Virus record (IMG/VR): IMGVR_UViG_3300032214_000715
Location: 62,001 to 126,000 of that record
Direction: 5' to 3' (one strand)
DNA: 64,000 nucleotides
Numbering within the stretch: position 1 is the first letter of the stretch; each line of letters starts with the position of its first letter. Positions 1,097 through 35,783 of this stretch are shown here, in pieces. The translations under genes were made by a program, and so were the position numbers. Under the pieces are notes generated by a model, which was given only the letters and a program-made list of their open reading frames with translations, was not told the origin of the DNA and ran no database searches.

Positions 1097-1564
1097 TTAC
1101 CTAAAACTCAGTGCTGTAGTACAAATCTTGTGAAAATTTTCTGTATCCTCTTTATACAGATCATGTGCGAATTGAATAAGTTTAAGTTTTTTCTCAATAT
1201 CTTCCTGTTTCTTGTTCTTAGAACGTTCAACGTATGTAGGACTAAGAGTTTCTTTAAAATGCTTCATGTTTCCGGCGTGATTAGTCCACTCTAGATTAGA
1301 AACATCATTATTTGACTTGTTACCATCAATATGATTGACAACATTATATCCTGGCGGGGGCCCCTTCAAAAATGTCATAGCAACGAGACGATGAACTGAA
1401 ATCGTTACTGTTTTGCCGTTTACTGACAGCCCAACTTTGCGATACCCTTGCCAGTAACTGCCATTAATTTCAACTGGTTCGCCTCCTCGTTTAGAGGAAA
1501 ATACTTTTCCACTATTAGTGACAAAGTAACCTGGAAAATTTTTGATTTCTACTGCGTCTTTCAT
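1097..1564 (-). CDS. NUMOD4-HNH homing endonuclease
   Basis: YFVTNSGKV, VHRLVA and VNHIDGNKSNNDVSNLEW motifs. Confidence 0.9.
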   Translation of the reverse strand: MKDAVEIKNFPGYFVTNSGKVFSSKRGGEPVEINGSYWQGYRKVGLSVNGKTVTISVHRLVAMTFLKGPPPGYNVVNHIDGNKSNNDVSNLEWTNHAGNMKHFKETLSPTYVERSKNKKQEDIEKKLKLIQFAHDLYKEDTENFHKICTTALSFR

Positions 1565-8630: not shown

Positions 8631-8815
8631 ATTTCAAATCTTGTTAATTCTACGCCACTAAGAAAATTAGTATTTACCAACTCAGATAAAGCATCAAGTT
8701 TTACTAATATCTGATCGTGGGAAATATAAACCCCGGAAATCATATATTCTTTGTTATTGTAAGTGACTAATTGTCCTGTTTTATATATTGGCAAATAAAA
8801 TACTTTAGTTGGCAT
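8627..8815 (-). CDS. Hypothetical protein
   Basis: MPTKVFY..., overlaps both neighbours. Confidence 0.55.
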   Translation of the reverse strand: MPTKVFYLPIYKTGQLVTYNNKEYMISGVYISHDQILVKLDALSELVNTNFLSGVELTRFEI

Positions 8816-9275
8816 ACCAAATCTCTTTGAAGCCTTCTTCTTCAGTGGGCATTTCAAAATTTTGAATCATAACGCTAACCACATTCCACGGAATAGTTTT
8901 TCCTGGACGATTTGACAATCGTGTCAGTAATTCGCTTTCAGCCGGTGTACGAAACACTACCGCAATCGCATAGTAGTTAGACAGCATGTTGAACTTCTTT
9001 TTTCTGCTAATGACTGACGTAGAAGTTTGATCCCAGATAATATCCTTGCCTTCATCCCGCGCCCGTACTACATCGTCTGCCATTAGTTTTACGGCATACG
9101 GCATGTAGTCTCGAAAGACTTCACTGTAGGTTTGACCCACTGTATTGGCATAGTTTTCTACATGAGCGTCTGTGCTAACAATAGCACAATTTTTAGCCCA
9201 CTCTTGATTTTTGATCCACGTAGATTTACCACTACCTGGAACACCAACTAATACATACAACTTTGGCTGACTCAT
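8805..9275 (-). CDS. P-loop kinase (AAA_33 / polynucleotide kinase-like)
   Basis: GVPGSGKST Walker A; start at MSQPK. Confidence 0.8.
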   Translation of the reverse strand: MSQPKLYVLVGVPGSGKSTWIKNQEWAKNCAIVSTDAHVENYANTVGQTYSEVFRDYMPYAVKLMADDVVRARDEGKDIIWDQTSTSVISRKKKFNMLSNYYAIAVVFRTPAESELLTRLSNRPGKTIPWNVVSVMIQNFEMPTEEEGFKEIWYAN

Positions 9276-9362
9276 TTGTTTTCCATTTAATGATTGATGT
9301 AGTATACTATAGACTGTATTTTTTGTCAAACAAATTCTATGTTATTTATTCACGTGGGAAAT

Positions 9363-9386
9363 AAAAAAGCACCCGAAGGTGCTTTT
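9363..9386 (-). terminator. Intrinsic terminator after tmRNA coding piece
   Basis: AAAAGCACC-TTCG-GGTGCTTTT plus T-run. Confidence 0.85.
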
Positions 9387-9655
9387 AGGTTTTTTCTGTT
9401 GCCCGGTATTTCCTACCGCGATAGCCGGTTTAGGCAGCCATCAGGAATGCTTCATTGTTAGCATTTAAAGGTTTTGCTTCTACAGTCGAGATATCTCAAC
9501 ATTAACGACTTCTGCTTTGCCGATTCTAATCATTTCTTATTAGCTCCGTCGAATCCTTTCATCCCCATAAAAAACATTATATTGCTTTTTATGAAAATGG
9601 TGGAGATGCCGGCATACGATAGCCGGGTCCGCAACTCATCAGATAATGACTTTCA
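9387..9655 (-). ncRNA. ssrA: Two-piece (circularly permuted) tmRNA; tag (A)ANNEAFLMAA
   Basis: Acceptor piece ending CATCTCCACCA (9598) lies upstream of GGGGATGAAAGGATTCGAC (9566); 7-bp acceptor with G3.U; tag frame 9462-9430. Confidence 0.9.
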
Positions 9656-9666
9656 AGGAAAATATC

Positions 9667-10353
9667 CTAGCGAATATTTTTATTTATCTCAATCATTCTG
9701 CCAATTTTTATTAGTTCAGTTTCATATAGCATTCTTCTTTCGTGTGATTTTTTACCTTCGTCAAGATTTACTAAACAACCACTATGAATTATAAGCCCAA
9801 AAATATCAATTAGCTTGGATTCTATCGACAATGCTTCATTTTTTGTCATGTTTTCTTTAAGAATAGATACTGAAATTTCAGAACCAGATTTTTTTATTTT
9901 TTGACGATATTTTCTATGCGAATCATTTCTATCTAAATCGTATGCTCTAGATCCTTGACCCATTCCTATATAAAATGGCTGATGCTGCATTCCAATCGTC
10001 GCCGCAAAAGTAGTGACTCCGTGTTTTCCTATAGCTATTTTTTTAGAAGGATCACAGTGAGCATAAACATAATAAGAATTATCAGTGACGTCTTCGTTAT
10101 ATAAATGAAGAATATCTGTGTTGTAAATGTTGACGCACGACTCAAATACTTCTTTTGAATGCTTATTCTTAGAATAATGACCGTGATTGGATCTCAAATT
10201 ACCTAACATATTTTTTGACCACGTCAGTAATTTTTTTAGTTCTTCTTCTGATTGCGAATCAACTTCTATATTCCATATAGAAGTATTACGTATCTGACCT
10301 TTAGTGTCAGTGACCTGTTTTCTTTTTATTTCCATACTAGTAGTATAAGACAT
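9667..10353 (-). CDS. GIY-YIG (LEM-3-like) homing endonuclease
   Basis: YYVYAHCDP...PFYIGMG...R, plus EALSIESKLI and LVN. Confidence 0.8.
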   Translation of the reverse strand: MSYTTSMEIKRKQVTDTKGQIRNTSIWNIEVDSQSEEELKKLLTWSKNMLGNLRSNHGHYSKNKHSKEVFESCVNIYNTDILHLYNEDVTDNSYYVYAHCDPSKKIAIGKHGVTTFAATIGMQHQPFYIGMGQGSRAYDLDRNDSHRKYRQKIKKSGSEISVSILKENMTKNEALSIESKLIDIFGLIIHSGCLVNLDEGKKSHERRMLYETELIKIGRMIEINKNIR

Positions 10354-10466: not shown

Positions 10467-10658
10467 TTACCAATTCTCCACGCTAGAAATTACAACTTCA
10501 AAGGTGCCTTCAATATCACCAATCTTAGTTTGAACTTTCATAGTAACAGTAGCGCCAATACCGCTGCTATTGTCACTTTCTACTTCAAAAAATTCCACAT
10601 CAGGAAATTTCTTTGACAGTTCAACCATCTTTTCTAAGTCATCACGATGTAGCAACAT
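10467..10658 (-). CDS. Hypothetical protein
   Basis: MLLHRDD..., overlaps upstream gene. Confidence 0.6.
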   Translation of the reverse strand: MLLHRDDLEKMVELSKKFPDVEFFEVESDNSSGIGATVTMKVQTKIGDIEGTFEVVISSVENW

Positions 10659-11130
10659 TTTGCTTACTCTTAACATATTCACGATATTCACGCTGCCAAT
10701 TATGTTCTTCGGGAACATCGTATGGCAATCCTAATTCACCCATCATAAGACGCATTACACGTGTATTTGGACTACGAAATCCTTCTACTAGCATAAAGCC
10801 CATATGTTCACCTACTTGTGCCACTGCGCCACTACGAGCTACTCCTGCGTAACAGTGTACTACAACATTCATATTCTTGTCAAGTGCGTGACGCAATAAA
10901 CCAACCAATTCTTTTGCTTGTGACTCACTGATAAACATTTCAGGATCATCAGCTTCATCGTTGTCATCAATATCAAGAAATTCAAAACGATAAATTTCTT
11001 TGAATTCATGCTTTGGTGTAGGGAACCAGCCTGCTGGATCCATAATTTGAATTAGCATAGAGTTTGATCCAGCTTTGTGATGGTGTCCTATAGGCACATC
11101 GGCAGCGGCTACATTTTCAATCCAGGGCAT
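10642..11130 (-). CDS. Protein tyrosine/dual-specificity phosphatase-like
   Basis: VHCYAGVARS (CX5R). Confidence 0.85.
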   Translation of the reverse strand: MPWIENVAAADVPIGHHHKAGSNSMLIQIMDPAGWFPTPKHEFKEIYRFEFLDIDDNDEADDPEMFISESQAKELVGLLRHALDKNMNVVVHCYAGVARSGAVAQVGEHMGFMLVEGFRSPNTRVMRLMMGELGLPYDVPEEHNWQREYREYVKSKQNVATS

Positions 11131-12354: not shown

Positions 12355-12558
12355 ATGCCGCCGTGCGACTTCATCACTCTGTATGAAATAGGAGTTGGAT
12401 CATTAGCGGTACGACACAGTGAAATTACAACGATTGAACTTACCGCAGAATGCGCTAGTCGCATTACATTAAGCAATGGGTATAGCAAAGTAGTACAAGA
12501 AAATCCAACTAGAATATTGTTCTTAATCAACGCAGCACAAGAATTGTGTAAAGATTAA
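12355..12558 (+). CDS. Hypothetical protein
   Basis: 67-aa ORF following the previous gene. Confidence 0.5.
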   Translation: MPPCDFITLYEIGVGSLAVRHSEITTIELTAECASRITLSNGYSKVVQENPTRILFLINAAQELCKD

Positions 12559-13049
12559 GAATCCCAACTCAATCTAGATGTTTTCATTGCCGGAGCGCCC
12601 GCGTATTTCTTAACAATTTCTTCTCCAGCATCTATAAATCTAAGCGCTCGTAGTCCAACTACATTATTGGTAGTGTCAATGACTTCCTCAGCATTGGGTC
12701 TTTCGCTGTGATTGGATAATAAGAATGAGCTGATATGTATCACTCCAGTACTCTCACTGTATCTCCATCTTTTTGTCTTAGCAAACACAGCAGCATCTTC
12801 TGGTGATAATTTATATTCTATTCTACCAATTGGTATGACATGCTGATTATTGATCCAACGAAGACCCATCATTTTTACGAACCTAGTGTTCTTAATTATC
12901 TGCCAGTCTTCATCATCTATTTTTACAACTGGATCTAGAACAATTAATTCTCCATTCTGAATTGGAACAGAAGCAAATAATCCATTGCCCGCACTCTTAA
13001 TTCGTGACTTGGCCATATAACTCTTTGATGTTACTTCATTAATACGCAT
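12555..13049 (-). CDS. SET-domain protein
   Basis: GNGLFA, NHSERPN and ALRFIDAGEEI...Y motifs. Confidence 0.8.
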   Translation of the reverse strand: MRINEVTSKSYMAKSRIKSAGNGLFASVPIQNGELIVLDPVVKIDDEDWQIIKNTRFVKMMGLRWINNQHVIPIGRIEYKLSPEDAAVFAKTKRWRYSESTGVIHISSFLLSNHSERPNAEEVIDTTNNVVGLRALRFIDAGEEIVKKYAGAPAMKTSRLSWDS

Positions 13050-13567: not shown

Positions 13568-13645
13568 TGGCAGGGGATCCAGGATTTGAACCTGGGAATG
13601 TCGGAATCAAAATCCGATGCCTTAGACCAACTTGGCTAATCCCCT
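13568..13645 (-). tRNA. tRNA-Gln(TTG)
   Basis: Cloverleaf with CCA; 5' end overlapped by the HNH ORF. Confidence 0.92.
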
Positions 13646-14086
13646 TTTGTTGTATTTTCCTCTTTTTTTACCGGATAAAGATGTTGAAATATTCTTTTTG
13701 TGTTCTTCTGATTTTGGTTTTGTGGATCCTTTATTCTTTTTCCCATTTTCAGATAACATATTTTTAGTCTGTTCTTCTCCGTATTTAAGAACAGATCGCT
13801 CGTATGGAGAAAGATGTGTTCCACGGTCTACTTGATCTAAGTGATTATCTTTATATGATCCCCAATAGATATGATTTGGATTTGAACATTTAGGATTATT
13901 ACAGGCATGACACACGATAGCATTGTCTCCCTTTTTAGGGATAGATGTATTAAGAGTGAATGCCAAAAGCCCAGTTAAATGATAAGAATATTTCAATCCT
14001 CTTTCGTCACATTTTTCATATAGTTTAATATGCGTCATTCTTTCATCTTTTGAACTAAACATATATTCTTTAATATCAATTGGCAT
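13622..14086 (-). CDS. HNH-type (zinc-binding loop) homing endonuclease with NUMOD3-like tail
   Basis: VCHACNNPKCSNPNH...N and KSEEHKKNIS; start at MPID after AAGGA RBS. Confidence 0.8.
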   Translation of the reverse strand: MPIDIKEYMFSSKDERMTHIKLYEKCDERGLKYSYHLTGLLAFTLNTSIPKKGDNAIVCHACNNPKCSNPNHIYWGSYKDNHLDQVDRGTHLSPYERSVLKYGEEQTKNMLSENGKKNKGSTKPKSEEHKKNISTSLSGKKRGKYNKRGLAKLV

Positions 14087-14125
14087 AATAATTCCTTTGT
14101 TTTTATTATTTAGTAAAACAACATA

Positions 14126-14158
14126 AATTCTATGCTCTCCCAATTGAGCTAACCCCCA
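14126..14158 (-). pseudogene. Orphan tRNA 5' half
   Basis: TGGGGGTTAGCTCAATTGGGAGAGCA gives acceptor strand plus D-arm, then breaks off before the HNH gene. Confidence 0.65.
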
Positions 14159-14168
14159 TCTGAATAAA

Positions 14169-14230
14169 ACAGGATGCTTTTTACGTTTCAAATTAAAAGT
14201 TTGATGTATAAAGTTTGCTGTACGCATCCT
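14169..14230 (-). ncRNA. Mini-RNA carrying a Lys(TTT)-like anticodon stem-loop
   Basis: AGGATGC/GCATCCT closing stem, TACAGCAAA, TCAAA-CTTTTAA-TTTGA. Confidence 0.55.
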
Positions 14231-14236
14231 AAAATC

Positions 14237-14331
14237 TGGACCGTCGGACAGGATTCGAACCTGCATCAGTATACAGTGATACCACTCCAGTTACCTTTGT
14301 CCGCGTTCGTAGCGCGAGGGGATACCGACGG
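14237..14331 (-). tRNA. Non-canonical tRNA-Arg(ACG) with rewired D-arm
   Basis: 7-bp acceptor, anticodon arm, T-arm and CCA present; only 7 nt where the D-arm belongs. Confidence 0.7.
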
Positions 14332-14752: not shown

Positions 14753-15029
14753 TGGTGGGACCAGGGGGGTTCGAACCCCCGACCAACGGATTAACCTACC
14801 ACTATAGTTTTCACTACCAGTTTCCTGTTTGTGGTCTGGACTATACCTTCATCGTATCATTTCTGACTTAGATGCCCGCCGTCTAGTCTCTACACGTTCC
14901 CATTACTGGGCTTCGCTCGGTATCGCCATTTTACAGGGTTCACCGAATTTGACGGGTTCTACTTACAAAATTTCTTTTGTAGCACTCCTATTTTAAAGTC
15001 CGCTGCTCTACCGACTGAGCTATAGTCCC
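14753..15029 (-). tRNA. tRNA-Lys(TTT), intron-containing
   Basis: Exons 15029-14996 and 14794-14753 rebuild GCGGA-CTTTTAA-TCCGT. Confidence 0.88.
14795..14995 (-). mobile_element. Group I intron (about 201 nt, no ORF) in the tRNA-Lys anticodon
   Basis: AAATTCGGTGAA, GTAGAGACTAGACGG and AAGGTATAGTCC core elements; terminal G. Confidence 0.88.
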
Positions 15030-16363: not shown

Positions 16364-16723
16364 TTATAAACCTAACGTCTTGTAACCATATTTCTTTGCT
16401 ACTTTGACAGAAACGCCAAGCGCAGCAGCACATGGAAACCGAACATGTTTCTTGAACCGATATCCATTTAAGGTGAATGGTTTCAACACTGTGTCACAAT
16501 TCCAACAATTTCGTTGACAACTGATGTAACCAAGTTCTTCTAACTGATTACGCAACTTAGCGAACTCATCGTGATCTTTATTGCTATGTGTAATCATTTT
16601 ATGGTGACCACTGAGAATTTTAATCAAATCATCTGGTGTAGGGTTCTCACGATCAGACAACAATGTATATTCTGTCGTGACATGTACATCAGTTAGGTAT
16701 TGTTCATCAATAGTGAAATCCAT
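16364..16723 (-). CDS. Hypothetical protein
   Basis: GAGGT RBS before MDFT. Confidence 0.7.
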   Translation of the reverse strand: MDFTIDEQYLTDVHVTTEYTLLSDRENPTPDDLIKILSGHHKMITHSNKDHDEFAKLRNQLEELGYISCQRNCWNCDTVLKPFTLNGYRFKKHVRFPCAAALGVSVKVAKKYGYKTLGL

Positions 16724-16846
16724 AATTACCTCTAAAAATATTTCTGTATACACCTGCTGACATGGGCACTAAGGTTAATAGTTTGTGCCTAGATTTTTTA
16801 CAGCCGATGAATCATTGTCACGACATAGCTAATAGCGACAACTTTA

Positions 16847-16886
16847 CCTGACGATTTTATAAATATCCTGACGATTTTATAAATAT
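16847..16886. repeat. 20-bp perfect tandem duplication
   Basis: cctgacgattttataaatat x2. Confidence 0.9.
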
Positions 16887-16971
16887 AAAATCAGCATCTA
16901 ACTCATGTGTCTTACCACACTATATATTAAATAATATTTTAACACATCAGCATGTGTATACAGAAACAAAA

Positions 16972-17296: not shown

Positions 17297-17370
17297 ATAT
17301 AACCATATTTGAACACACTCAGGAGGTCAAATTCCTTTTACCAACCAGTTATGGTGAATGTGTTCAAATA

Positions 17371-17469
17371 TAGCGACCCTTTGTGGGCAGGATTCGAACC
17401 TGCAAGTGGCTTCTATTTCCACTGGCCCTATTAGAGGCCTATGTTTACCATATTCCATCACCACGGGTC
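17371..17469 (-). ncRNA. tRNA-like RNA (type II body, bulged 9-bp acceptor, abnormal anticodon loop)
   Basis: D-arm, long variable arm and perfect GCAGG-TTCGAAT-CCTGC T-arm. Confidence 0.6.
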
Positions 17470-17812
17470 ATCGGAGTCATGACTTCCGATTATGATCGAG
17501 GTTAATTACTCCTCTCTGTTAGACGCAATTTGAGTACAACTCAAGCGGCTCTTTCTAACATTTACCATAGTTCAGCACACTCAAACGGGTCTTTTCGCCA
17601 TTTCTCTTCCATGCCGTTCCACGTGAGAATGGGTAGAATGCGCTGAACTATGGTTAGTACGAGACACGATGAGCAATCCCAACTCCTCATGACCAATCGG
17701 TCACTTAGGTTAAACCTCATGCCACTTATGTACTACCATATTTGAACACACTCGCTCCCGCAATTAGACGGTTGCATTAACATCAAAAGGATGTGACGAA
17801 TGTGCTCAAATA

Positions 17813-17891
17813 TGGTACCCAGTATGGAATCGAACCGATTTCTCCAGCCGCACTTAAGAGGGTGGCGTCTTAACCAATAGACGAACTGAGT
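17813..17891 (-). ncRNA. tRNA-like RNA with distorted anticodon arm (CTCTTAA loop)
   Basis: Acceptor, D-arm, T-loop and CCA present; anticodon and T stems are bulged. Confidence 0.55.
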
Positions 17892-17981
17892 ATAACCATA
17901 TTTGAACACACTACCCAGCGTATCTAGAAAACTGTTTGTACATTAGCAATGTGCTCAAATATGGTGAAACTACGTTTTCAA

Positions 17982-18191
17982 TTACATCAACCAAATGCCG
18001 TCATAATAATATTGCCAGTGATAAGAAACACTACCAGTATCCCATTTAACCATAATTTCGTTATCATCACGGCGGCTGGCTTGTTCTATTGGAATAAGTT
18101 TATATATCATTCCCTCATTACCAGTATAAGAAGATTTTACTCTATCTCCGATTCTGAGAGACTGAAATGGAACATTCGATAGTTTTTGCAT
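17982..18191 (-). CDS. Hypothetical protein
   Basis: AGGAGG RBS. Confidence 0.7.
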   Translation of the reverse strand: MQKLSNVPFQSLRIGDRVKSSYTGNEGMIYKLIPIEQASRRDDNEIMVKWDTGSVSYHWQYYYDGIWLM

Positions 18192-18833
18192 TATGGCCTC
18201 CTATGCCATATTAAGATCCATTAAAAAATCCAAACAGTAAAATCTTTTGTGATTACTCTCCTACTATATTTGAAGATACTAGTAGACTTGCGGTCGCTTC
18301 ATCGGTGTCGTTGTGCGTCCCACTCGCATCCATTTTGTCGCTCTTTCGAGAACACCAAAACTAATACCTTCAAATATAGGCCCCACCGTTAACTGGTCAT
18401 ATCCCTAGAGTTACTTTTAGAAGGATTGTAGCACGGTGGGCACACCTGTCCTTCTCTACACTGTGTTTACTACTATTGCCTGCCCTAGGGATTAGGTACC
18501 TACCCTAGCGACTCATAGTGGATTTGTAGATAATCCGCTGCTCTTGCTAGTTTACACCATATTTTAGCAGACACGGGCCGATTCCTTATCCGTGTTTATT
18601 CTTCCCTGTGCTGGCCAGTCGGGTCGAGGCAAACTGCTAAAATATGGTGACCTGTGTTCGTATGCGGTATTGATTGACATACGGGAAAGGTCAGCGTTCC
18701 CTCTATCGGCCCTGATTTTACAGCTAGCGCGAAATTGGCGTCGGTGGTCCTAGACCTGAAGTGGTGCGGGGTCATTTCGCACGATTGCCACAAGGCTTTC
18801 GCCATCTTTCACTTACCGACATTGAATTATCAC

Positions 18834-19232
18834 TTATGATAGAAGTAATTTTTTTGATCCTTGCAGGAAATTCTGCAATTCTTTGTTTGTGCAAGCAATA
18901 GGCAAAGGAACTTTTCTCTTAACCTGCTGAACATATTTACTATCTTTGTTATTGGCATACCAATCTAGATTATCTTCCTGCATAGCAAACAAGACTGAAA
19001 TAAAACGATCTTCTTCGCCAGAATTGCTACCCACTAGTTTATATCCAACACCTAAGTTTTTTGGATGAAATTTATCCACCCATGATAAAAATTCGTTTGT
19101 TGTTATTCCTTGTGGGAAGAGATCCAAATTAGCCACACATCGCATGACATAATTTCCATACTGATCGGATTTAATCAGTTTTTTAGTTCCAACTGGAATG
19201 AGATGATCTTTTGATAAATTGAATTGTGTCAT
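18834..19232 (-). CDS. Hypothetical protein
   Basis: AAAGGT RBS before MTQF. Confidence 0.7.
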   Translation of the reverse strand: MTQFNLSKDHLIPVGTKKLIKSDQYGNYVMRCVANLDLFPQGITTNEFLSWVDKFHPKNLGVGYKLVGSNSGEEDRFISVLFAMQEDNLDWYANNKDSKYVQQVKRKVPLPIACTNKELQNFLQGSKKLLLS

Positions 19233-19257
19233 ATTGACCTTTTTAAGATAACTTGTT

Positions 19258-19332
19258 TGGTAGACCACCACGGTATCGAACCATGTTCTGTAGAGTAAGA
19301 GTCTACTGCATCACCATTAATGCTTGTGATCT
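19258..19332 (-). tRNA. tRNA-Lys(CTT)
   Basis: Cloverleaf with CCA. Confidence 0.88.
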
Positions 19333-19338
19333 ATTGAT

Positions 19339-19423
19339 TGGTGGAGTGTACTGGGATCGAACCAGTCGTGCCCGAAGGCGGCGGATTTACAGTCCACTGC
19401 ATCACCATTGATGCTTCCACTCC
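19339..19423 (-). tRNA. tRNA-Tyr(GTA)
   Basis: Type II cloverleaf with CCA. Confidence 0.93.
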
Positions 19424-19935
19424 ATTATTCTTTACCATAGTTCAACACACTACCAGTCCCGGGGACTTGAACCCCTTTGCTCTAGATAGTTTCCTGACAT
19501 TTCGGTCTGGCAAGTAATATGCTGAACTATGGTGCCAATCATTTACATTGGCTTAGGGAATTTCGGTCCTCACGGGTGCTCCGCTACATACCACCCATCT
19601 ACCATACAAATTATCCGGTCTTTGTATGTAGACTTTTTACTCTCATTTACCATATTGAAACACACTACCGCAAACTTTCAATGCACGATGCAGTCTATGG
19701 CATCCGTAATGTGCTTCAATATGGCGGCAAGTTTCGTGATAGTTTGATGACGTTGTAGAGGTTCACTATGGCGTGAACTTACAGAGCGCAATAACTTCTC
19801 CCTATCAAAAACCCACTTGCCTATTACCATAGTTCAACACACTGATGAGAATCACACTCCCCTATTTCTCACAATAGGTTACGCCTAGGAGTCACACACA
19901 GATTCGGCTGTGCTGCGATACAATACGCTGAACTA

Positions 19936-20010
19936 TGGTACCCCTGAACGGTTACGATCCGTCTTCTCAGCCTTGAAAGGGCCGTGTTCTAGCCACTAAA
20001 CTACAGGGGC
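19936..20010 (-). tRNA. tRNA-Glu(TTC)
   Basis: Cloverleaf; CCA overlaps the start of a conserved hairpin. Confidence 0.9.
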
Positions 20011-20026
20011 AAATACTCTATGCTGA

Positions 20027-20057
20027 TTCTTAAAGAACTGTTGCTGAACTCTCAGCG
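20027..20057 (-). promoter_or_regulatory. boxB-like hairpin plus boxA-like antitermination motif
   Basis: GCTGA-GAGT-TCAGC then GTTCTTTAAGAA; also at 21727-21756 and 22060-22087, boxA alone at 22874-22885. Confidence 0.65.
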
Positions 20058-20118
20058 TATGAACATATTATATGCTAACGCTGATTTATTGTCAACAGTC
20101 TTTTGTCAATTTGTTGTT

Positions 20119-20439
20119 TGGTGCCCGGAGCCGGAATCGAACCGGCACGGCCGAAGCCGAGGGATTTTAAGCGTGTTGTCTCAAAGTTTCCAATGAGCAC
20201 GGACTATCTCTTTACCTTCAACATTACTTGTTAAGGCAGTGGGCGTTCTATGCTGGTTATTAAGAGGGCTTTACCTCTCCAGTAGTCTCTACACCTTCAC
20301 TGAATGTATTCAGTGCTTGGCTCGCGATTGCCATTTTACAGGCTCTCCCGAATTAACCCACAGTTTACTCACACATTTCTGTGTGAGGGGGACGGGCTTT
20401 CTGGTCCTCCCTTGTGTCTACCTATTTCACCATCCGGGC
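20119..20439 (-). tRNA. tRNA-Leu(TAA), intron-containing
   Basis: Exons 20439-20408 and 20171-20119 rebuild AGGGA-CTTAAAA-TCCCT. Confidence 0.88.
20172..20407 (-). mobile_element. Group I intron (about 236 nt) at tRNA position 31/32
   Basis: TTAATTCGGGAGA, GTAGAGACTA and AAGAGATAGTCC core elements; terminal G. Confidence 0.85.
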
Positions 20440-20520
20440 GTTTTGTTAACTTTCCATTAATTATGTTTGTAATTTTATAGACAATATAATACATTTTAAT
20501 AACATGGTTAATGAAGTTTG

Positions 20521-20594
20521 CTGGCCTGATTGGGATCGAACCAATGACCTAACGATTAACAGTCGTTTGCTACTACCGTCTGAGCTACAGGCCA
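20521..20594 (-). tRNA. tRNA-Asn(GTT), no encoded CCA
   Basis: Cloverleaf. Confidence 0.9.
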
Positions 20595-20611
20595 GCAAAC
20601 TTCACTAATTT

Positions 20612-20689
20612 TGGTGGGAGCGGTCGGACTCGAACCGACATCTGCGCGATTATGAGTCGCGAGTCATTAACCAATTAGACGACACTCCC
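20612..20689 (-). tRNA. tRNA(CAT), probably Ile2 (lysidine type)
   Basis: Cloverleaf with CCA; third CAT tRNA, identity inferred. Confidence 0.85.
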
Positions 20690-20735
20690 AATCTTTTATC
20701 TAACAAACAAAGTATAACTGTATTATTTACAGTTG

Positions 20736-21521
20736 TCAACTAGTTCTTAGAATTTTTTCTAGTTCATCAACAATCTTATTCAGATCATTTTCTACATTAT
20801 CGCTCCAAATGTATCTTATTTTAAATCCACACATTTGAGCAAGTTGTTCTTTCTTTCTATCCTTCTGCCAGATTTCTTCTCTAGTTCCCATAGATTTATA
20901 TGGTACCTTGAATTCTTCTGTTAAAGTCTTAGGATGATACGCTATTCCTTGATATTCAACAATGTATTTTATATCTAGAAACACCAAATCATAAAAAAAT
21001 ATTTGAGAATCATCCCTTAAAAAGTATTCTCTTCCATTTTTATGAAAGAAAACATTAGTGACTTTTGGAATCTGTTCTAGAAGACGCTCAATTACAACTT
21101 GACTTTCAACCGAGGCATATGAAGTCCTCGGATTTCTCAGATTTCCCTCGCGTATCAATTGTCGAGTGTGCGCGGAAACTTCTGGTTTGTCTAAGCCCAA
21201 TTCTGCTGCCTTTGAGAACTTATTACGCCCGATCCCTAATCCTTTTTTACCCTTCATTCCATAAGAAGGGTTCTTAGTCTTTTTTTCGGGATTTTTCTTA
21301 CATAATGATTCGTGCTGAGAAATGCTATTTGAATTTTTTCCTACGAAATCACAAAACTTACATTTGTATTCAGCAAGCTTAAACTGGTCTGCTTTTTCTC
21401 TAACTAGAGAAGAGAACAATTTTCCAGTTTTACATTGCTTGGATCCATAATGGATCTTTAGATTATTAGACGTTATCTCATTTTTACATGAGATACAAGA
21501 ACATAAATATTTTGCTACCAT
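20736..21521 (-). CDS. Vsr/EDxHD-like putative homing endonuclease with Zn fingers
   Basis: YDLVF...VEYQGIAYH...KDRKK...GFKIRYIW. Confidence 0.7.
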   Translation of the reverse strand: MVAKYLCSCISCKNEITSNNLKIHYGSKQCKTGKLFSSLVREKADQFKLAEYKCKFCDFVGKNSNSISQHESLCKKNPEKKTKNPSYGMKGKKGLGIGRNKFSKAAELGLDKPEVSAHTRQLIREGNLRNPRTSYASVESQVVIERLLEQIPKVTNVFFHKNGREYFLRDDSQIFFYDLVFLDIKYIVEYQGIAYHPKTLTEEFKVPYKSMGTREEIWQKDRKKEQLAQMCGFKIRYIWSDNVENDLNKIVDELEKILRTS

Positions 21522-22137
21522 ACATCTATTTATGCTTTGACCTATTGTTCTATGTTTTTACTATATTTGAACACACTGCCAGTCCCGGGGACTTGAACCC
21601 CTTTGCTCTTGATAGTTTCCCGACATTTCGGTCCGGCAAGCAATGCGCTCAAATATAGTATCACGCTACGTCAACAGTGCTAGTATTTAGCACCTCAGTT
21701 GGCGTGATACAAAAACTCTATGCTAATTTTTAAAGATCATCGCTGATTTCTCAGCGTTGAAGACAGTATATCAGAGTTCTGATTTATTGTCAAGAAACTG
21801 CCAGGTAGCTTAATGTGTGATTTCCACTACCCTGTTACTCTGTATCAGTCTAGATTGCTCTAGCATCAACCTGCGTCACACTGTGTGCAGACAGTATCAT
21901 AACTATATCAGGACTCCCATTTATTGTCAACAACTCTCAATGATTAGATCGAAATGCACTCGCATCTGCTTTTTGAGCCGCGTGTTCTACACCCTTGATT
22001 CCTAGACTAGTACTAGAGGCGTGTGCCCATTTACACTAGCACTTCGATCTAATCACTGATTGTTAAAGAACTTGTTGATTTCTCAACTGTTAGAGACAGT
22101 ATATCAGGGTTCTGATTTATTGTCAAATTTTTGGTTA

Positions 22138-22470: not shown

Positions 22471-22710
22471 TTCTTGTTCCTTTTTTCTAACTTGAATACA
22501 GTATATCAGTTACCTGATTTATTGTCAACTGTTATCTGTAGTGTGCTTATCAGCCCATCCTGTTAATTCAAGCTATACACCCTTACCAGATGTTCACACC
22601 GTTACATGCGGGGGTTATTTCCCCTATCGTATGCCCCCGTAACGAGAGGCATATGGGCTGATAAACACACTATAGATATCTGTAATGCGTTTTAGGCTGA
22701 AGACTTCATA

Positions 22711-22780
22711 AACTCTAGAGGGATTCGAACCCTCGTCACCGACCGATGGGCCAGTGTCTTATCCGCTAGACGATAGAGAC
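22711..22780 (-). pseudogene. tRNA-like element with short anticodon loop and no CCA
   Basis: D-arm and GAGGG-TTCGAAT-CCCTC T-arm, inside long hairpin 22678-22874. Confidence 0.6.
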
Positions 22781-23108
22781 TCCCTCCTTTTTCGCTCGGC
22801 AAAGCTACTCTGATCGGGGTGAAGTAACAGACCTTCTGACGATTGCCGCCATCAGCCTAAAACACACTACAGATTGTTAAAGAACTGGACAGTTTACGCT
22901 ACTGTCAAACGAAGACCTGTAGGCTATCAGGCTGCCACGCTGATGTTAACACCGATCAACGGGATTGTGCTTCCCGAAACTTCTAGACAGTGACGGTGGG
23001 AGTTTGTTGTCCCGCTTATGTCAACAGTCTCAGAGACCCTGTTTTTTGATCAGTTCTTCAGCGTATGAATACATTATAGTTGAAGACACATTTATTGTCA
23101 AATTTTGG

Positions 23109-23339
23109 TCAATCAACTCCGAAATGTTGCTTGATTTTATCTGCATTAGTGCCACCGATCTGAAGTTGGTATTCAGCATAGTCGGCACATTTCCGAACAG
23201 TGTCTTCTATAAGCAACTCGGCGAACTTTTTTCGGTCAAATACTGTCCGGATAGTGCTCAATCCACCAGCATTCATATCAAAGTCGCAAGGCACCTTTAC
23301 CCAGCATTGATCTTCAAGTTCAAGAATTCGTTCGTTCAT
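23109..23339 (-). CDS. MNERI-family small protein, copy 3
   Basis: MNERI...KFAELL...HFGVD. Confidence 0.75.
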   Translation of the reverse strand: MNERILELEDQCWVKVPCDFDMNAGGLSTIRTVFDRKKFAELLIEDTVRKCADYAEYQLQIGGTNADKIKQHFGVD

Positions 23340-23644
23340 TTTTGTGTATCTAGATAAAAAGTGGCCACACGCAACATCGCCATTGCCTGTTCACGGTTTG
23401 TGGGGAGAGGAACCTGATCTTGTTCGATAGTTTGTTCTTCAACTCCGAAATGTTGTTCGATCCGCATAGCAATGATTAGACCAGGACCGCCAAGTTTAGA
23501 ACCATCATATTCTTGGGCAATGGACATACATTCCGCCACAATCAACTCGGCGAACTTTTCTAAATCTTGCTCAATACCAAATCGTACCATTGATACCGCA
23601 TCAAAACCAGCCTGTAGAGCAAGGTCTTTAATTCGTTCGTTCAT
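23336..23644 (-). CDS. MNERI-family small protein, copy 2
   Basis: MNERI...KFAELIVAEC...HFGVEE. Confidence 0.75.
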   Translation of the reverse strand: MNERIKDLALQAGFDAVSMVRFGIEQDLEKFAELIVAECMSIAQEYDGSKLGGPGLIIAMRIEQHFGVEEQTIEQDQVPLPTNREQAMAMLRVATFYLDTQK

Positions 23645-23895
23645 TCTTCAACTCCGTTTTTCATAAAGTCGTGTGCCCAGTCTTGAGTGTAGTCGCAGAA
23701 TGGACAGATCCATCCACGAACAGTGGGAACCAATACGCCACGATCACCAGCGACAACGGGATGATCACTACGGTTAGCACGACAAGTAAAAGGGTGCATT
23801 CTGTGTGGTAATGTAGAGTCAGTGTCGCCAAATTTTCGCCACGGTCCAAACTGATGCTGCCATAGTTTCTCTACTTCTTGTGGAGTAAAAGTCAT
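23641..23895 (-). CDS. Hypothetical Zn-binding protein
   Basis: HPFTC...WICPFC; ends GVEE. Confidence 0.7.
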   Translation of the reverse strand: MTFTPQEVEKLWQHQFGPWRKFGDTDSTLPHRMHPFTCRANRSDHPVVAGDRGVLVPTVRGWICPFCDYTQDWAHDFMKNGVEE

Positions 23896-24149
23896 TCTTC
23901 AACTCCGAAATGTCGTTTGATCTTATTTCCAACATATATCAATGCCTCGTTGAAGCCTTCATAATACTCACTTTTGGTATTGGCATATCGGCTATTCACA
24001 GATAACTCCGCACACTCTTCCACAATGAGTTCGGCAAACTTTTTTACAAACTTTTCACTATTGACTGACAATGCGATATTTGACACTGGATGCCGTGTAG
24101 TAGCATATTCATTAGCCTGTTGGGCAAGTTCAAAGATTCGTTCGTTCAT
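23892..24149 (-). CDS. MNERI-family small protein, copy 1
   Basis: MNERI...KFAELIVEEC...HFGVEE. Confidence 0.75.
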   Translation of the reverse strand: MNERIFELAQQANEYATTRHPVSNIALSVNSEKFVKKFAELIVEECAELSVNSRYANTKSEYYEGFNEALIYVGNKIKRHFGVEE

Positions 24150-24721: not shown

Positions 24722-25318
24722 ATGTTTCACTATGTCTATAGAATTACTAATATAAAAAACAATAAACACTATTATGGCAAAAGATCATCTAAAGTTACTC
24801 CATTTGAAGATTTAGGCAAAAAATATTTCAGTTCCTGTAAAGATAAGTTATTTATTAATGAGCAAAAAAAATTTCCCCAAAATTTCAAATATAAAGTAAT
24901 AAGATGCTTCAATAGCTCAACTAGTGCTATAAATTTTGAAATAAAATTACACAATAAATTTCAAGTAGATATCTCACCTCATTTTTATAATAGGGCAAAA
25001 CAAACATCTAATAAATTTCAGACATCTTACGTTTCTATCGATACTAGAAAAAAATTATCAGATGCGACCAGAAAGACTAATATAGGTGCTATAACGTCTA
25101 AAAAAAGAGCGGAATCTAATAGAAAAAATGGAGACGTTAAATGGCAAAAATATATAGAAATAGTAAACGCTTCCACTATTGATTTTACCAAATATGGGTG
25201 GGCTAAATTATTGGCCGACCTACTAGGAATATCTCATCAACAATCGTCCAAATGGCTCAAAAGGCATTGCCCTGAAATTTATTCAACGTGTTTCAAACGA
25301 AAAAATGGTCCCGCGTAG
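24722..25318 (+). CDS. GIY-YIG homing endonuclease (Seg-like)
   Basis: HYVYRITNIKNNKHYYGKR...YFSS...E...FYN. Confidence 0.88.
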   Translation: MFHYVYRITNIKNNKHYYGKRSSKVTPFEDLGKKYFSSCKDKLFINEQKKFPQNFKYKVIRCFNSSTSAINFEIKLHNKFQVDISPHFYNRAKQTSNKFQTSYVSIDTRKKLSDATRKTNIGAITSKKRAESNRKNGDVKWQKYIEIVNASTIDFTKYGWAKLLADLLGISHQQSSKWLKRHCPEIYSTCFKRKNGPA

Positions 25319-25575: not shown

Positions 25576-25799
25576 GTTACTATCTTTATTTAGTCTCTAT
25601 TATAGGCGCAATAATTTTTTTGTCAAACACTGTGTTGTCCGAAACTGCTTTAGTGTCATGATCGTCAATAAAGACGGCTCCGATATTGTTGACACAATTT
25701 GTTCCATTCATTAATTACGCGTTCGTTTATCGTACATGAGATTTCCCAATTACTCATTTTTAATCCTTTCAGTTGATAAATATATTTAAGGAGAATAGT

Positions 25800-25913
25800 A
25801 TGTTAGAAACATTATTATATCTATTGATTGGCGCATTCATTGGTTGGAATATTCCTCAACCAGAATTTGCTAAAAATTTACAAGCAAAAGTTATAGCATT
25901 ATTCAAAAAATAA
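25800..25913 (+). CDS. Small membrane protein (37 aa)
   Basis: MLETLLYLLIGAFIGWNIPQP...; ATAAATA and AAGGAG RBS. Confidence 0.65.
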   Translation: MLETLLYLLIGAFIGWNIPQPEFAKNLQAKVIALFKK

Positions 25914-26104
25914 CACACTCAACATTAAGTGTGTATATTAAAGAGCACTAGTTAATGCTCTTTAATATAGTATGCCCGTCGCATACATGTCTATTGAACT
26001 GCGTAGTTATAAATAACCAACACGGTTCTCCAGAACCCCCCGTTTTAATTAAGCAGATTAAGGCTGCCGACGCCCGGGTACGCCACACACTTTACTACAT
26101 AAAC

Positions 26105-35739: not shown

Positions 35740-35778
35740 TTCGTACTCCCTCATAGTTATTTATGAAGGGGTACGAAA
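35739..35778 (-). promoter_or_regulatory. RBS-sequestering hairpin containing a late-promoter-like ATAAATA
   Basis: TTTCGTACCCCTTCATA-AATAAC-TATGAGGGAGTACGAAA. Confidence 0.7.
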
Positions 35779-35783
35779 AACAC

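What the first reader, a model, noticed from the sequence alone, without database searches (positions are those of the whole stretch)
17303..21660. Array of conserved long-stem hairpins, each starting at a CCA-like end and holding a different insert
Seen: ten units with an approximately 17-bp closing stem (CCATAtttgagCRCATT / AGTGTGttcaaaTATGG) around 35-80 nt of variable sequence. Stem interiors covary (TTTGA/TCAAA, GTTCA/TGAAC, TTGAA/TTCAA), and most mismatches read as G.U only on the minus strand, indicating RNA-level selection. The first bases of each stem are the CCA (or CTA) of the preceding RNA, e.g. tRNA-Glu. A minimal copy is at about 25935-25970 and a divergent one at 21941-22055. 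Inference: a repeated processing or protein-binding signal that releases many small RNAs from one transcript.
Basis: partly seen in the sequence, partly recalled or inferred. Interest (0 to 1): 0.8.

Follow-up and report, generated by a model that had tools for sequence, protein, structure and literature searches.

The report
Handle-plus-cargo small RNAs in phage tRNA array
A giant freshwater phage carries, inside its tRNA gene array, ten genes for small RNAs that all share one 20-base-pair "handle" hairpin starting at the CCA end of the preceding tRNA but hold different, swappable inserts; relatives place the same handle right behind a Ro60-like RNA-binding protein gene, so they may be a new, multi-copy kind of phage Y-RNA-like adaptor.

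Summary
Ten minus-strand hairpins lie at 17303-21658, with 16-23 bp closing stems and 29-76 nt inserts. Each starts at the CCA (or CUA) of the preceding tRNA or tRNA-like RNA. All fold far better than shuffles. The arm word occurs 14 times against 0.32 expected.

The same architecture recurs in about 30 uncultured phage contigs: 74 unique hairpins with 51 different stems. Non-Watson-Crick pairs are 93 G.U against 10 A.C on the tRNA strand, which indicates RNA-level selection. Helix length is held near 20 bp. Inserts fall into about 60 unrelated families. Some are conserved and covarying. At one orthologous site the insert was replaced between identical flanks.

No Rfam family or paper describes it, and the one arm word scanned found none in bacterial genomes.

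The units sit in an rRNA-operon-like stable-RNA operon. About 13 kb outside the window the phage encodes a Ro60/TROVE-like protein. In relatives, 14 of 45 family hairpins start within 80 nt of that gene's stop codon.

Best reading: processed handle-plus-cargo RNAs whose handle marks processing boundaries and probably docks the Ro60-like protein. Cleavage, binding and cargo function are all untested.

The parts
19827..19938 (-). Handle-plus-cargo hairpin 9. Begins at the CCA of tRNA-Glu (19936-20010). 18-20 bp stem, 76-nt cargo.
   Evidence: z -4.2
19650..19724 (-). Hairpin 8. 19-bp stem (UUGAAGCAC variant), 37-nt cargo. Follows a tRNA-like RNA ending in a 7-bp acceptor-like stem + G + CCA. Its arm is 15/18 identical to the hairpin behind the Ro60-like gene in locus L023.
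19435..19532 (-). Hairpin 7. 20-bp stem, 58-nt cargo with a tRNA T-arm-like hairpin. 95% identical in cargo to hairpin 10.
18557..18647 (-). Hairpin 6. 14-16 bp stem (UUUUAGCAG variant), about 60-nt cargo.
   Evidence: z -3.4
18264..18379 (-). Hairpin 5. 20-bp stem (UUUGAAGGUAU variant, starts CUA), 76-nt cargo.
17896..17964 (-). Hairpin 4. 20-bp stem, 29-nt cargo.
17736..17815 (-). Hairpin 3. 20-bp stem, 40-nt cargo. Begins at the CCA of the tRNA at 17816-17891.
17565..17653 (-). Hairpin 2. 18-bp stem (GUUCAGCGC variant), 53-nt cargo. The cargo is conserved, with compensatory changes, in locus L045.
17303..17373 (-). Hairpin 1. 19-bp stem (starts CUA after the odd tRNA-like gene 17379-17467), 33-nt cargo. 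Followed after 6 nt by tRNA-Ile.
21561..21658 (-). Hairpin 10. 20-bp stem (starts CUA). Cargo is a paralogue of hairpin 7. Lies in its own transcription unit behind promoter 21793.
21937..22059 (-). Long-stem unit of the same architecture but different stem sequence (21 bp, 81-nt cargo). Starts directly after a boxA leader.
22533..22874 (-). Two abutting long-stem units: 22678-22874 (27-bp stem enclosing the tRNA-like gene 22709-22781) and 22533-22678 (26-bp stem, 94-nt cargo). They carry an AGUGUG motif but are not CCA-anchored.
   Evidence: z -8.5
25934..25969 (-). Probable cargo-less handle (17-bp stem, 2-nt loop, U.G wobble on the minus strand).
   Evidence: cargo-less handles in other phages
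20060..20095 (-). Consensus sigma-70-type promoter (12/12) predicted to drive tRNA-Glu, hairpins 9-1, several tRNAs and two ORFs.
20023..20056 (-). rRNA-operon-like leader: small hairpin (boxB-like, 20043-20056) followed by a boxA-like word GUUCUUUAAGAAU (20023-20038). Sister leaders lie at 22056-22087, 22870-22906 and 21723-21756.
19534..19826 (-). Two non-tRNA RNAs between hairpins (19726-19826 and 19534-19649). Each ends in helix + N + CCA, which supplies the first three bases of the next handle. Similar units lie at 18648-18833, 18380-18557, 17655-17736 and 17468-17565.

Best explanation
The ten units are genes for one family of small structured RNAs, each built as a handle plus a cargo.

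Handle and cargo:
- The handle is a roughly two-turn helix, median 20 bp. It is A/U-rich in its lower half and formed by the RNA's own 5' and 3' ends.
- The cargo is a 29-190 nt insert that differs from unit to unit.

Transcription and processing:
- The units are transcribed on the minus strand as part of the phage's tRNA and stable-RNA operon. That operon is built like an rRNA operon: strong promoter, boxB/boxA anti-termination leader, no internal terminators.
- Each handle begins in the encoded CCA of the preceding tRNA or tRNA-like RNA and ends 3-12 nt before the next RNA.
- The ordinary tRNA-end machinery, possibly helped by a double-strand-specific nuclease, would therefore release every unit as a stable hairpin with a short 3' tail. 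That machinery is a cut behind CCA and RNase P at the next 5' end.

Function:
- The handle is the functional constant. It sets the boundaries, clamps and protects the cargo, and most likely is the docking helix for the phage's Ro60/TROVE-like protein. The units would then be Y-RNA-like adaptors.
- The cargo is the variable, exchangeable effector part. Some cargos are tRNA-like. New cargos are swapped in by recombination within the conserved arms.

Shown:
- The hairpins, the strand, the covariation, the CCA anchoring and the constant helix length.
- The operon features.
- Cargo conservation and cargo replacement.
- The positional link of the family to the Ro60-like gene in relatives.

Inferred: that the units are cut out, which nuclease does it, that the Ro60-like protein binds the handle, and what any cargo does.
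For: RNA gene family:
- The hairpins are real and non-random.
- 74 unique members have 51 stem variants. Positions 6-16 are 99% paired against 67.5% when the 3' arms are shuffled among members.
- G.U outnumbers A.C 93 to 10 with orientation fixed by the tRNAs.
- An unbiased scan shows about 60 of 88 perfect stems of 15 bp or more in the arrays start at CCAUA.

Boundary role:
- 28 of 74 start exactly at a tRNA CCA, and the rest follow helix + N + CCA ends.
- Trailers of tRNAs without a hairpin start AAU or AAA, not UAU.
- The helix is 19-22 bp whatever the cargo size, and positions 3-10 are 69-100% A/U.

Operon:
- Promoters lie at 20095 and further upstream, with no terminators.
- boxA-like GUUCUUUAACAAU leaders match the rrn boxA-spacer ugcucuuuaacaauuua (PMC2724277).

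Cargo:
- 90 hairpins give 61 cargo clusters.
- One 145-nt cargo family has 19 of 38 pairs with compensatory changes.
- Behind the same tRNA-Lys (91-100% identical) the cargo is unrelated between phages.
- L002 and L011 have about 115 nt of identical flank on each side and a replaced cargo, with breakpoints at the stem top.

Ro60 link:
- The 475-aa DUF2828+DUF7788 protein lies about 13 kb beyond the window start.
- Its model (pLDDT 75) has as its four best PDB matches Ro60/TROVE proteins only. They align over the full length with E from 7e-8 to 6e-5.
- Depositors call homologues 'Ro-like RNA binding protein'.
- In 80 loci fetched by this protein, 73 hold co-oriented tRNA arrays.
- 14 of 45 family hairpins start within 80 nt downstream of its stop codon, against about 0.24 expected if placed evenly.
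- The L023 copy is 15/18 identical to the arm of window hairpin 8.
- Cargo-less handles persist at that position, so the handle has a role of its own.
- Known precedent: Ro60 of Thermus phage phiLo binds two Y-RNA-like RNAs encoded beside its gene (PMC12135203). Bacterial Y RNAs are a long 5'/3' stem plus a tRNA-like module encoded next to Ro60 (PMC4201824).
Against: - There are no expression or end-mapping data. Only assembled contigs of relatives were available.
- The handles are perfect helices. They lack the bulged helix and CGAA motif that known Ro60 proteins recognise.
- No Rfam family matches at E up to 10 in the regions searched that way (16.9-26.2 kb of the window, L023, L274), and the Y-RNA models are among those with no match.
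- In the window phage the Ro60-like gene is about 31 kb from the hairpins. It is followed by a plain terminator-like hairpin, not by a handle.
- In the L003/L009-type phage, no DUF2828 gene was found in the 33 kb examined around a hairpin-rich array.
- The Ro60-like gene sits inside tRNA arrays generally, so part of the co-occurrence could be shared neighbourhood. The 14 adjacent cases represent only about 8 independent sequences.
- About 40% of family stems lack the CACAUU/AGUGUG motif.
Confidence: 0.42

Rival explanations
1. Pure processing stalks. The handles work like the RNase III stems that flank 16S and 23S rRNA. A double-strand nuclease (host RNase III, or a phage enzyme such as the array-linked PF04308 RNase H-like protein) cuts the two-turn helix. 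The A/U-rich lower half then melts and frees the neighbouring tRNA ends. The cargo RNAs are unrelated small RNAs with no common protein partner, and the Ro60 linkage is just shared neighbourhood.
For: - rRNA-operon-like leaders sit directly in front of long stems.
- Helix length is held at about 20 bp, with an A/U-rich lower and a G/C-richer upper half.
- Long stems also enclose true tRNAs (window 22678-22874; L274).
- The PF04308 gene co-occurs with arrays.
- The CCA is sequestered in the helix, so some cut must free it.
Against: - RNase III has little sequence preference, yet the arm sequence and a U.G wobble at position 16 (41 of 74) are conserved between phages whose inserts are unrelated.
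- Cargo-less handles are kept behind the Ro60-like gene.
- No RNase III gene appeared in the parts of the phage genome that were annotated, but only part of the genome was checked.
- Most tRNAs in the same arrays do without any stalk.
Confidence: 0.27
2. Passive clamps or insulators. The stems are never cut or bound specifically. They only make each small RNA fold on its own and resist exonucleases. Their ends are defined solely by the processing of the neighbouring tRNAs.
For: - The helices are very stable.
- They sit between RNase P and 3'-end sites.
- Adjacent units often use different stem variants, which would limit mispairing.
Against: This does not explain several observations:
- near-identical arm sequences across diverged phages;
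- the fixed 20-bp length;
- the conserved wobble;
- cargo-less copies;
- the position right behind the Ro60-like gene.
Confidence: 0.13
3. A DNA-level mobile or recombination element. This could be a miniature inverted-repeat element or an integron-attC-like cassette site whose inverted arms are recognised on DNA. Under this reading the RNA hairpin is a by-product.
For: - There are many copies with inverted-repeat ends.
- Cargo is replaced between identical flanks.
- Contigs of relatives join different arms (joints 17798>19708, 17947>19708, 17964>19433).
- Homing endonuclease genes lie in the array.
Against: - The excess of G.U over A.C is strand-specific.
- 51 different arm sequences all stay complementary.
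- The units always lie in the tRNA orientation and start exactly at CCA. There is no target-site duplication, and no transposase or integrase in the loci examined.
- The scanned arm word matched 26 places in 185,579 bacterial and archaeal genomes, and none of them forms a family hairpin.
- Cargo exchange is explained equally well by ordinary recombination within 17-20 bp of shared arm.
Confidence: 0.06
4. Guide or antisense array. The handle is a processing and loading signal, and each cargo base-pairs with a host or phage target, in the manner of CRISPR RNAs, microRNA precursors or bacterial regulatory RNAs.
For: The layout is a constant repeat with variable inserts, and one cargo (17322-17354) contains an anti-Shine-Dalgarno-like CCUCC.
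Against: - No cargo has a significant complementary site in the 64-kb window.
- Cargos are internally structured and covary as folded RNAs.
- Cargo lengths range from 29 to 190 nt.
Confidence: 0.04

Closest known systems
Y RNAs / YrlA with Ro60 (Rsr), including the Y-RNA-like RNAs Yrl1 and Yrl2 of Thermus phage phiLo
   Same: - A small RNA whose 5' and 3' ends form a long stem carrying a variable module.
- In bacteria the module is tRNA-like, and two window cargos and some relatives have T-arm-like hairpins.
- The RNA is encoded beside a Ro60-type (TROVE + vWA) protein gene.
- It lies in RNA-repair and tRNA neighbourhoods (PMC4201824, PMC12135203, PMC7824862).
   Different: - The handles are perfect helices without the bulged helix or CGAA motif.
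- No covariance-model match.
- Ten or more copies per genome, against one to four.
- Anchored on the CCA of the preceding tRNA and embedded in a polycistronic tRNA operon.
- Hypervariable, exchangeable cargos.
- The protein is the divergent DUF2828 branch, not Pfam TROVE.
- In the window phage the gene is 31 kb away.
RNase III processing stalks of rRNA operons
   Same: Flanking sequences of a stable RNA pair into a helix of about 20 bp or more, inside an untranslated operon that starts with a boxB/boxA anti-termination leader. The helix marks where the RNA is cut out.
   Different: - The cargos are 30-190 nt small RNAs, not rRNA.
- The arm sequence is conserved between genomes.
- The stem overlaps the CCA of a tRNA.
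- Cleavage is not shown.
tRNA-linked pre-microRNA hairpins (TMERs) of murine gammaherpesvirus 68 (from my own knowledge, not checked here)
   Same: A viral tRNA-like unit is followed directly by hairpins that are set free by the tRNA 3'-end machinery.
   Different: - A eukaryotic virus using RNase Z and Dicer.
- Products of about 22 nt.
- No shared handle sequence.
- No variable internal cargo.
Stable RNAs C and D (species 1 and 2) in the phage T4 tRNA cluster (from my own knowledge, not checked here)
   Same: Non-tRNA stable RNAs of unknown function encoded among phage tRNA genes and matured with them.
   Different: Two single genes with no shared handle, no array and no known protein partner. 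There is no sequence similarity: the phage collection search found only tRNA matches.

Membership tests
Any Rfam 15 family | Covariance-model match at or near the gathering score | tested here: not met
   Window at gathering score. 16.9-26.2 kb at E up to 10. 14 related loci at gathering score. L023 and L274 flanks at E up to 10. Only tRNA, tmRNA, group I introns and chance-level noise were found.
Y RNA / YrlA | Long stem formed by the RNA's 5' and 3' ends, carrying a large loop or module | tested here: met
   16-23 bp closing stems with 29-190 nt modules.
Y RNA / YrlA | Conserved bulged helix (Ro60 site; CGAA-type motif) in the stem | tested here: not met
   The stems are continuous helices. 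A CCGAAAU loop occurs in only three window RNAs, inside the cargo.
Y RNA / YrlA | Encoded next to a Ro60 (TROVE + vWA) gene | tested here: inconclusive
   Met in relatives: 14 of 45 family hairpins lie within 80 nt of the stop codon, plus L023. In the window phage the gene is about 31 kb from the hairpins. Not found in 33 kb of the L003/L009-type phage.
Y RNA / YrlA | Bound by Ro60 in vivo or in vitro | not testable with these tools
   Needs RIP/CLIP or gel-shift assays.
Ro60 / TROVE protein family (the neighbouring protein) | HEAT-repeat ring plus vWA domain fold | tested here: met
   AlphaFold2 model with pLDDT 75 and pTM 0.65. The top four Foldseek PDB matches are 9kop, 2nvo, 9nfa_A and 9l5y_B, all Ro60/TROVE, with 504-555 aligned columns. 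Pfam gives DUF2828 + DUF7788 with a weak VWA_2 hit, not PF05731. phmmer against PDB sequences finds nothing.
RNase III processing stalk | Helix of about two turns made by sequences flanking a stable RNA in a polycistronic stable-RNA operon | tested here: met
   Median 20 bp. Operon context with boxA leaders and no terminators.
RNase III processing stalk | Staggered double-strand cleavage by RNase III | not testable with these tools
Intrinsic terminator | G+C-rich stem followed by a U run | tested here: not met
   The terminator scan lists none at the hairpins. The 3' flanks are UA..., not U runs.
Miniature inverted-repeat mobile element | Terminal inverted repeats with target-site duplication, either orientation, dispersed sites | tested here: not met
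   No duplication. The units always lie in the tRNA orientation and at CCA. Mismatches are strand-asymmetric.

The most novel reading that the evidence does not exclude
The array is a cassette-exchangeable library of adaptor RNAs for a phage Ro60-like ribonucleoprotein. One standard handle docks the protein. Each interchangeable cargo recruits, decoys or marks a different RNA or host factor, for example tRNA-targeting defence nucleases or exonucleases. Phages reshuffle the cargos by recombination within the handle arms. This would be an RNA-level counterpart of an integron inside the anti-defence tRNA island.
Probability: 0.2. Interest if true: 0.9.

Novelty: new variant of a known kind. Interest (0 to 1): 0.72.

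Why it matters
- Phage tRNA arrays are now viewed as counter-defence and translation-support islands, but their non-tRNA content is almost unexplored.
- This family shows that a whole lineage of freshwater phages, probably of Betaproteobacteria, packs its arrays with ten or more small RNAs built on one standard scaffold. The inserts turn over faster than the flanking tRNA genes.
- If the handle docks the Ro60-like protein, which is found in more than 700 cultured phages including Felixounaviruses, mycobacteriophages and Listeria phage A511, the family would open the long-standing question of what phage Ro60 proteins and Y-like RNAs do to direct test.
- It would also reveal a natural, modular RNA-display platform.
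- Even under the plainer reading, it gives a defined, sequence-conserved RNA punctuation signal for processing studies and for annotating phage arrays.

Tried and rejected
- Known RNA families: Rfam at gathering and permissive thresholds gave nothing for handles or cargos.
- Terminator or attenuator: no U tracts.
- Antisense targets of the window cargos within the window: none.
- Host origin: the exact arm word in 185,579 bacterial and archaeal genomes gave 26 chance matches and no hairpin. Limnohabitans phage DC31, the nearest cultured tRNA match, has no such hairpins.
- Cultured-phage DNA similarity: only tRNAs match.
- Transcript evidence: the RNA-labelled runs are served only as assembled contigs of relatives. 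They show presence and module shuffling, not ends.
- tmRNA idea: I first took the L002 hairpin for the intervening segment of the two-piece tmRNA gene. Reading the sequence showed that it precedes the tmRNA. Only the window's own tmRNA has a CCA-anchored intervening hairpin.
- ORFs inside the array (18834-19238 and 17982-18191): no Pfam, PHROG or Atlas lead.
- Genome walk for an RNase III gene: none among the called genes of record positions 33-73 kb and 114-145 kb. The rest of the 239-kb genome was not seen.
- Literature searches for a description of such hairpins found none.

Full report
**What the window is.** The window is positions 62,001-126,000 of a 239,163-bp uncultured phage contig (IMG/VR 3300032214_000715). 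The phage is a jumbo myovirus. Its tail sheath is 42-48% identical to those of Agrobacterium phage Atu_ph07 and Pseudomonas phage PA5oct. Between 9 and 26 kb, nearly everything lies on the minus strand. This region holds 26 ARAGORN tRNA genes, a two-piece (permuted) tmRNA, two group I introns, homing endonuclease genes and many near-identical sigma-70-type promoters. Runs that hold the sequence are freshwater, sediment and wastewater metagenomes. Related loci carry betaproteobacterial-type tmRNAs.

**Checking the observation.** All ten hairpins are present at the stated places.
- On the minus strand each reads 5'-CCAUAU...GCACAUU [insert] AGUGUGY...AUAUGG-3'.
- Stems are 16-23 bp and inserts 29-76 nt.
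- The arm word with up to three mismatches occurs 14 times in the window against 0.32 expected.
- Each unit folds with z from -3.4 to -6.8, and none of 200 shuffles folds as well.
- The interior of the stem varies between copies (UUUGA, GUUCA, UUGAA, UUUUAGCAG, UUUGAAGG) while staying paired.
- In the window, 23 of the 24 non-Watson-Crick pairs in the first 16 bp are G.U on the minus strand and none is A.C.
- Each stem starts with the CCA, or CUA in three units, that ends the preceding RNA.

**A family, not a local oddity.** The exact arm word, followed by my own hairpin scanner, found the same architecture in about 25 IMG/VR contigs and 7 metagenome contigs. All sit inside co-oriented tRNA arrays. 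The same word matched 26 places in one genome from each of 185,579 bacterial and archaeal species, and none of those is a hairpin. I fixed orientation by tRNA direction alone and used a selection rule that treats G.U and A.C alike. Under that rule:
- 74 unique hairpins hold 93 G.U against 10 A.C (p = 5e-18).
- They use 51 different sequences at stem positions 6-16.
- 99% of those positions pair, against 67.5% when the 3' arms are dealt out among the hairpins.

The pairing percentage is partly forced by the selection rule. The number of distinct, still-complementary stems is the real evidence. An unbiased scan for any perfect stem of 15 bp or more in the arrays shows about 60 of 88 begin at CCAUA. 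The total helix is 19-22 bp (median 20) whatever the insert length (29-173 nt). Positions 3-10 are 69-100% A/U, while positions 11-16 carry most of the G-C pairs. A U.G wobble is kept at position 16 in 41 of 74.

**Grammar of the array.**
- 264 of 273 tRNA genes in these loci encode CCA.
- Trailers without a hairpin start AAU or AAA, whereas hairpins supply UAU.
- 28 of 74 hairpins start exactly at an ARAGORN tRNA end.
- The other 46 follow either unrecognised tRNA-like ends with T-arms or small hairpins plus one base plus CCA.
- In the window, the segments between hairpins are such RNAs, for example a 7-bp acceptor-like stem + G + CCA at 19726-19826.
- The 3' arm is followed by U(A) and, where a tRNA comes next, 3-12 nt of spacer.

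In every case, therefore, a handle sits between a tRNA-type 3' end and the next RNA's 5' end.

**Operon context.** Strong promoters lie on the minus strand at 23101, 22528, 22126, 21930, 21793, 20739 and 20095. There is none between 20067 and 16800, and no terminator. Hairpins 9 to 1 are therefore predicted to share one transcript with tRNA-Glu, several other tRNAs and two ORFs. Hairpin 10 has its own promoter. Behind several promoters lies a small hairpin followed by GUUCUUUAACAAU or a close variant. That word matches the E. coli rrn boxA-spacer ugcucuuuaacaauuua (PMC2724277). At 22870 and 22056 this leader runs straight into the 5' arm of a long stem. The array is thus laid out like an rRNA operon, where flanking helices mark what is to be cut out.

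**The inserts are genes in their own right.**
- Ninety hairpins give 61 cargo clusters, and several clusters recur in different phages.
- The cargo of window hairpin 2 recurs in L045 with compensatory changes.
- A 35-nt cargo recurs in four phages with a U-A to C-G swap.
- A 145-nt cargo aligned from eight loci has 19 of 38 predicted pairs with double changes, both in the handle and inside the cargo.
- The cargos of window hairpins 7 and 10 are 95% identical. They carry a T-arm-like hairpin whose 16 bases equal the T-arm of the phage tRNA-Asp.
- No cargo matches Rfam, and no cargo has a complementary target in the window.

**Cassette behaviour.** Behind the same tRNA-Lys (91-100% identical in eight contigs), the arms are 69-100% identical but the cargos are unrelated, apart from one three-member family. 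L002 and L011 are colinear over 3 kb at 92% identity. They are 100% identical for about 115 nt on either side of this hairpin, yet the insert is replaced, with breakpoints at the top of the stem. Contigs of relatives in public runs join arms of different window hairpins. The conserved arms therefore act, at the least, as homology for exchanging cargos.

**The protein lead.** I walked along the contig using the gene-context tool. Just beyond the window start lie a TilS-like PP-loop ATPase, a PF04308 RNase H-like protein and a 475-aa DUF2828 + DUF7788 protein.
- Sequence search against PDB finds nothing for the 475-aa protein.
- A model built on 34 homologues (pLDDT 75, pTM 0.65) has as its four best PDB matches the TROVE domain and Ro60 dimer of Thermus phage phiLo, Deinococcus Rsr and vertebrate Ro60. 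These align over the whole length with E from 7e-8 to 6e-5. Next come isolated vWA domains.
- TM scores are only 0.38-0.46, so the fold assignment is good but the details are not.
- 711 cultured phage records carry the protein. Depositors name it 'Ro-like RNA binding protein', 'RNA-binding protein' or 'vWFA protein'.

**Positional link to the hairpin family.** I fetched 80 viral loci by this protein.
- 73 contain tRNAs, often 15-33, all co-oriented with the gene.
- With a strict handle motif there are 45 hairpins on the gene's strand. Fourteen begin within 80 nt downstream of the stop codon and none within 80 nt upstream. Even spacing predicts about 0.24.
- The 14 are about 8 independent sequences.
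- Hairpin locus L023 shows the same arrangement.
- These copies are preceded by a small tetraloop hairpin plus YCA, which is the same grammar as in the array. The L023 arm is 15/18 identical to that of window hairpin 8.
- Several copies have only a 3-4 nt loop, so they are handles without cargo.
- In three loci a 16-bp stem at that place encloses a true tRNA.

In Felixounavirus Si3 the gene heads a 17-tRNA array that also contains long-stem units.

Published work shows that Ro60 of phage phiLo binds two Y-RNA-like RNAs encoded beside it (PMC12135203). Bacterial Y RNAs are a long terminal stem plus a tRNA-like module next to Ro60 (PMC4201824). Some jumbo phages carry a TROVE protein as part of RNA-repair gene sets (PMC7824862). 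The window also encodes a metallophosphoesterase, a P-loop kinase and a dual-specificity phosphatase, which recur together in related loci.

**Weighing the readings.**
- The RNA-gene status of the units is well supported.
- That they are released from a polycistronic precursor is a strong inference from their position and the operon layout.
- Two features are not expected for a mere RNase III site or a passive clamp: the arm sequence and wobble conserved between phages with unrelated cargos, and the survival of cargo-less handles. Together with the position behind the Ro60-like gene, they point to a specific protein partner.
- Against the Ro60 reading, the stems lack the bulged helix that known Ro60 proteins read, and no model matches.
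- In this phage the gene is 31 kb away and is followed by a plain hairpin.
- A hairpin-rich T5-like relative showed no such gene in the 33 kb examined.
- The PF04308 RNase H-like gene also tracks the arrays (odds ratio 4.4, not corrected for phylogeny). It is an alternative partner.

I therefore give the combined 'processed handle-plus-cargo RNA, handle probably docks the Ro60-like protein' reading 0.42 and the 'processing stalk only' reading 0.27. The remaining weight goes to passive clamps, DNA-level elements and guide RNAs.

**Novelty.** Processing helices, Y RNAs and phage Ro60 proteins are known. New here are:
- a sequence-conserved handle anchored on the tRNA CCA;
- ten or more copies per genome inside a tRNA operon;
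- hypervariable, exchangeable, structured cargos;
- the link to the DUF2828 branch of Ro60-like proteins.

I found no description of this in Rfam 15 or in the searchable literature.

Noticed in passing
window 20023-20056, 21723-21756, 22056-22087, 22870-22906 (minus strand): rRNA-operon-like anti-termination leaders lie behind phage promoters: a small hairpin followed by GUUCUUUAACAAU, GUUCUUUAAGAAU or GAUCUUUAAAAAU. This suggests the phage recruits the host Nus-factor system for its untranslated RNA operons. A similar leader occurs in L065.
   Followed up: partly
window, 21 sites on the minus strand (e.g. 2297, 5696, 5968, 6258, 6590, 7036, 8025, 22126, 22528, 24653): A family of near-identical promoters, TTGACAATAAATC...TGATATACTGTATTCA, spaced every few hundred bases. 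It looks like a dense early-gene region with one promoter per small gene.
   Followed up: partly
record positions about 47.3-50.7 kb, outside the window (L229:11355-15640): A Ro60/TROVE-like protein (DUF2828 + vWA), a PF04308 RNase H-like protein and a TilS-like PP-loop ATPase sit together about 11-15 kb beyond the window start. The RNase H-like gene recurs inside hairpin-bearing arrays (L002, L003, L009, L023, L056).
   Followed up: partly
window 329-931, 8805-9329, 10642-11130 (minus strand): A metallophosphoesterase, an AAA_33/zeta-toxin-like P-loop kinase and a dual-specificity phosphatase. Together they look like an RNA end-healing set. They lie adjacent to each other in L107 and recur in L007, L033, L045 and L216.
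   Followed up: partly
window 9385-9708 (minus strand), hairpin 9560-9599: A two-piece (permuted) tmRNA gene. The segment between the acceptor piece's CCA and the coding piece forms a 17-bp hairpin that starts at the CA of that CCA (CAUUUUCAUAAAAAGCA...). It resembles the handle family.
   Followed up: partly
window 14814-15005 and 20180-20414 (minus strand): Two group I introns. The second splits a tRNA whose 3' half (about 20122-20175) matches trnL(TAA) of EBPR podovirus 3. Contigs of relatives lack the intron.
   Followed up: partly
window 17379-17467, 19342-19424, 22709-22781 (minus strand): Odd tRNA-like genes. Two have aberrant anticodon loops (ARAGORN 'tRNA-???'). One scores best as tRNA-Sec (36.6 bits, below threshold) and matches a 'tRNA-Tyr' of Limnohabitans phage DC31 at 85%.
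   Followed up: no
window 16739-16968 (minus strand), repeats 16844-16901: A 26-bp stem closes 178 nt right after tRNA-Cys. The enclosed stretch holds a tandem direct repeat (UAUUUAUAAAAUCGUCAGG twice), upstream of ORF 16364-16753.
   Followed up: no
window 1097-1564, 9667-10353, 13622-14266, 20736-21521, 24722-25318: Five homing-endonuclease-like ORFs (HNH, GIY-YIG, His-Me, zinc-finger type) are scattered through the RNA gene region. They might drive the module exchange seen between relatives.
   Followed up: no
window 32817-36737 (minus strand): The ribonucleotide reductase large subunit is in pieces. An intein/Hint domain lies at the start of the 611-aa ORF, and an unassigned 371-aa ORF sits between the two RNR parts.
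   Followed up: no
window 12555-13049 (minus strand): A SET-domain (protein lysine methyltransferase-like) ORF lies inside the tRNA array.
   Followed up: no
window 25773-25913 (+) and L007 155-302: A small hydrophobic ORF (about 40 aa) is conserved between the window and L007. In L007 it is enclosed by inverted repeats starting CCAUAAGGAG, and in the window it is followed by the cargo-less handle-like hairpin.
   Followed up: no
window 23109-24149 (minus strand): Four tandem small ORFs (76-102 aa) have near-identical junction sequences (CUUCAACUCCGAAAUGU...). They are probably a paralogous early-gene family.
   Followed up: no
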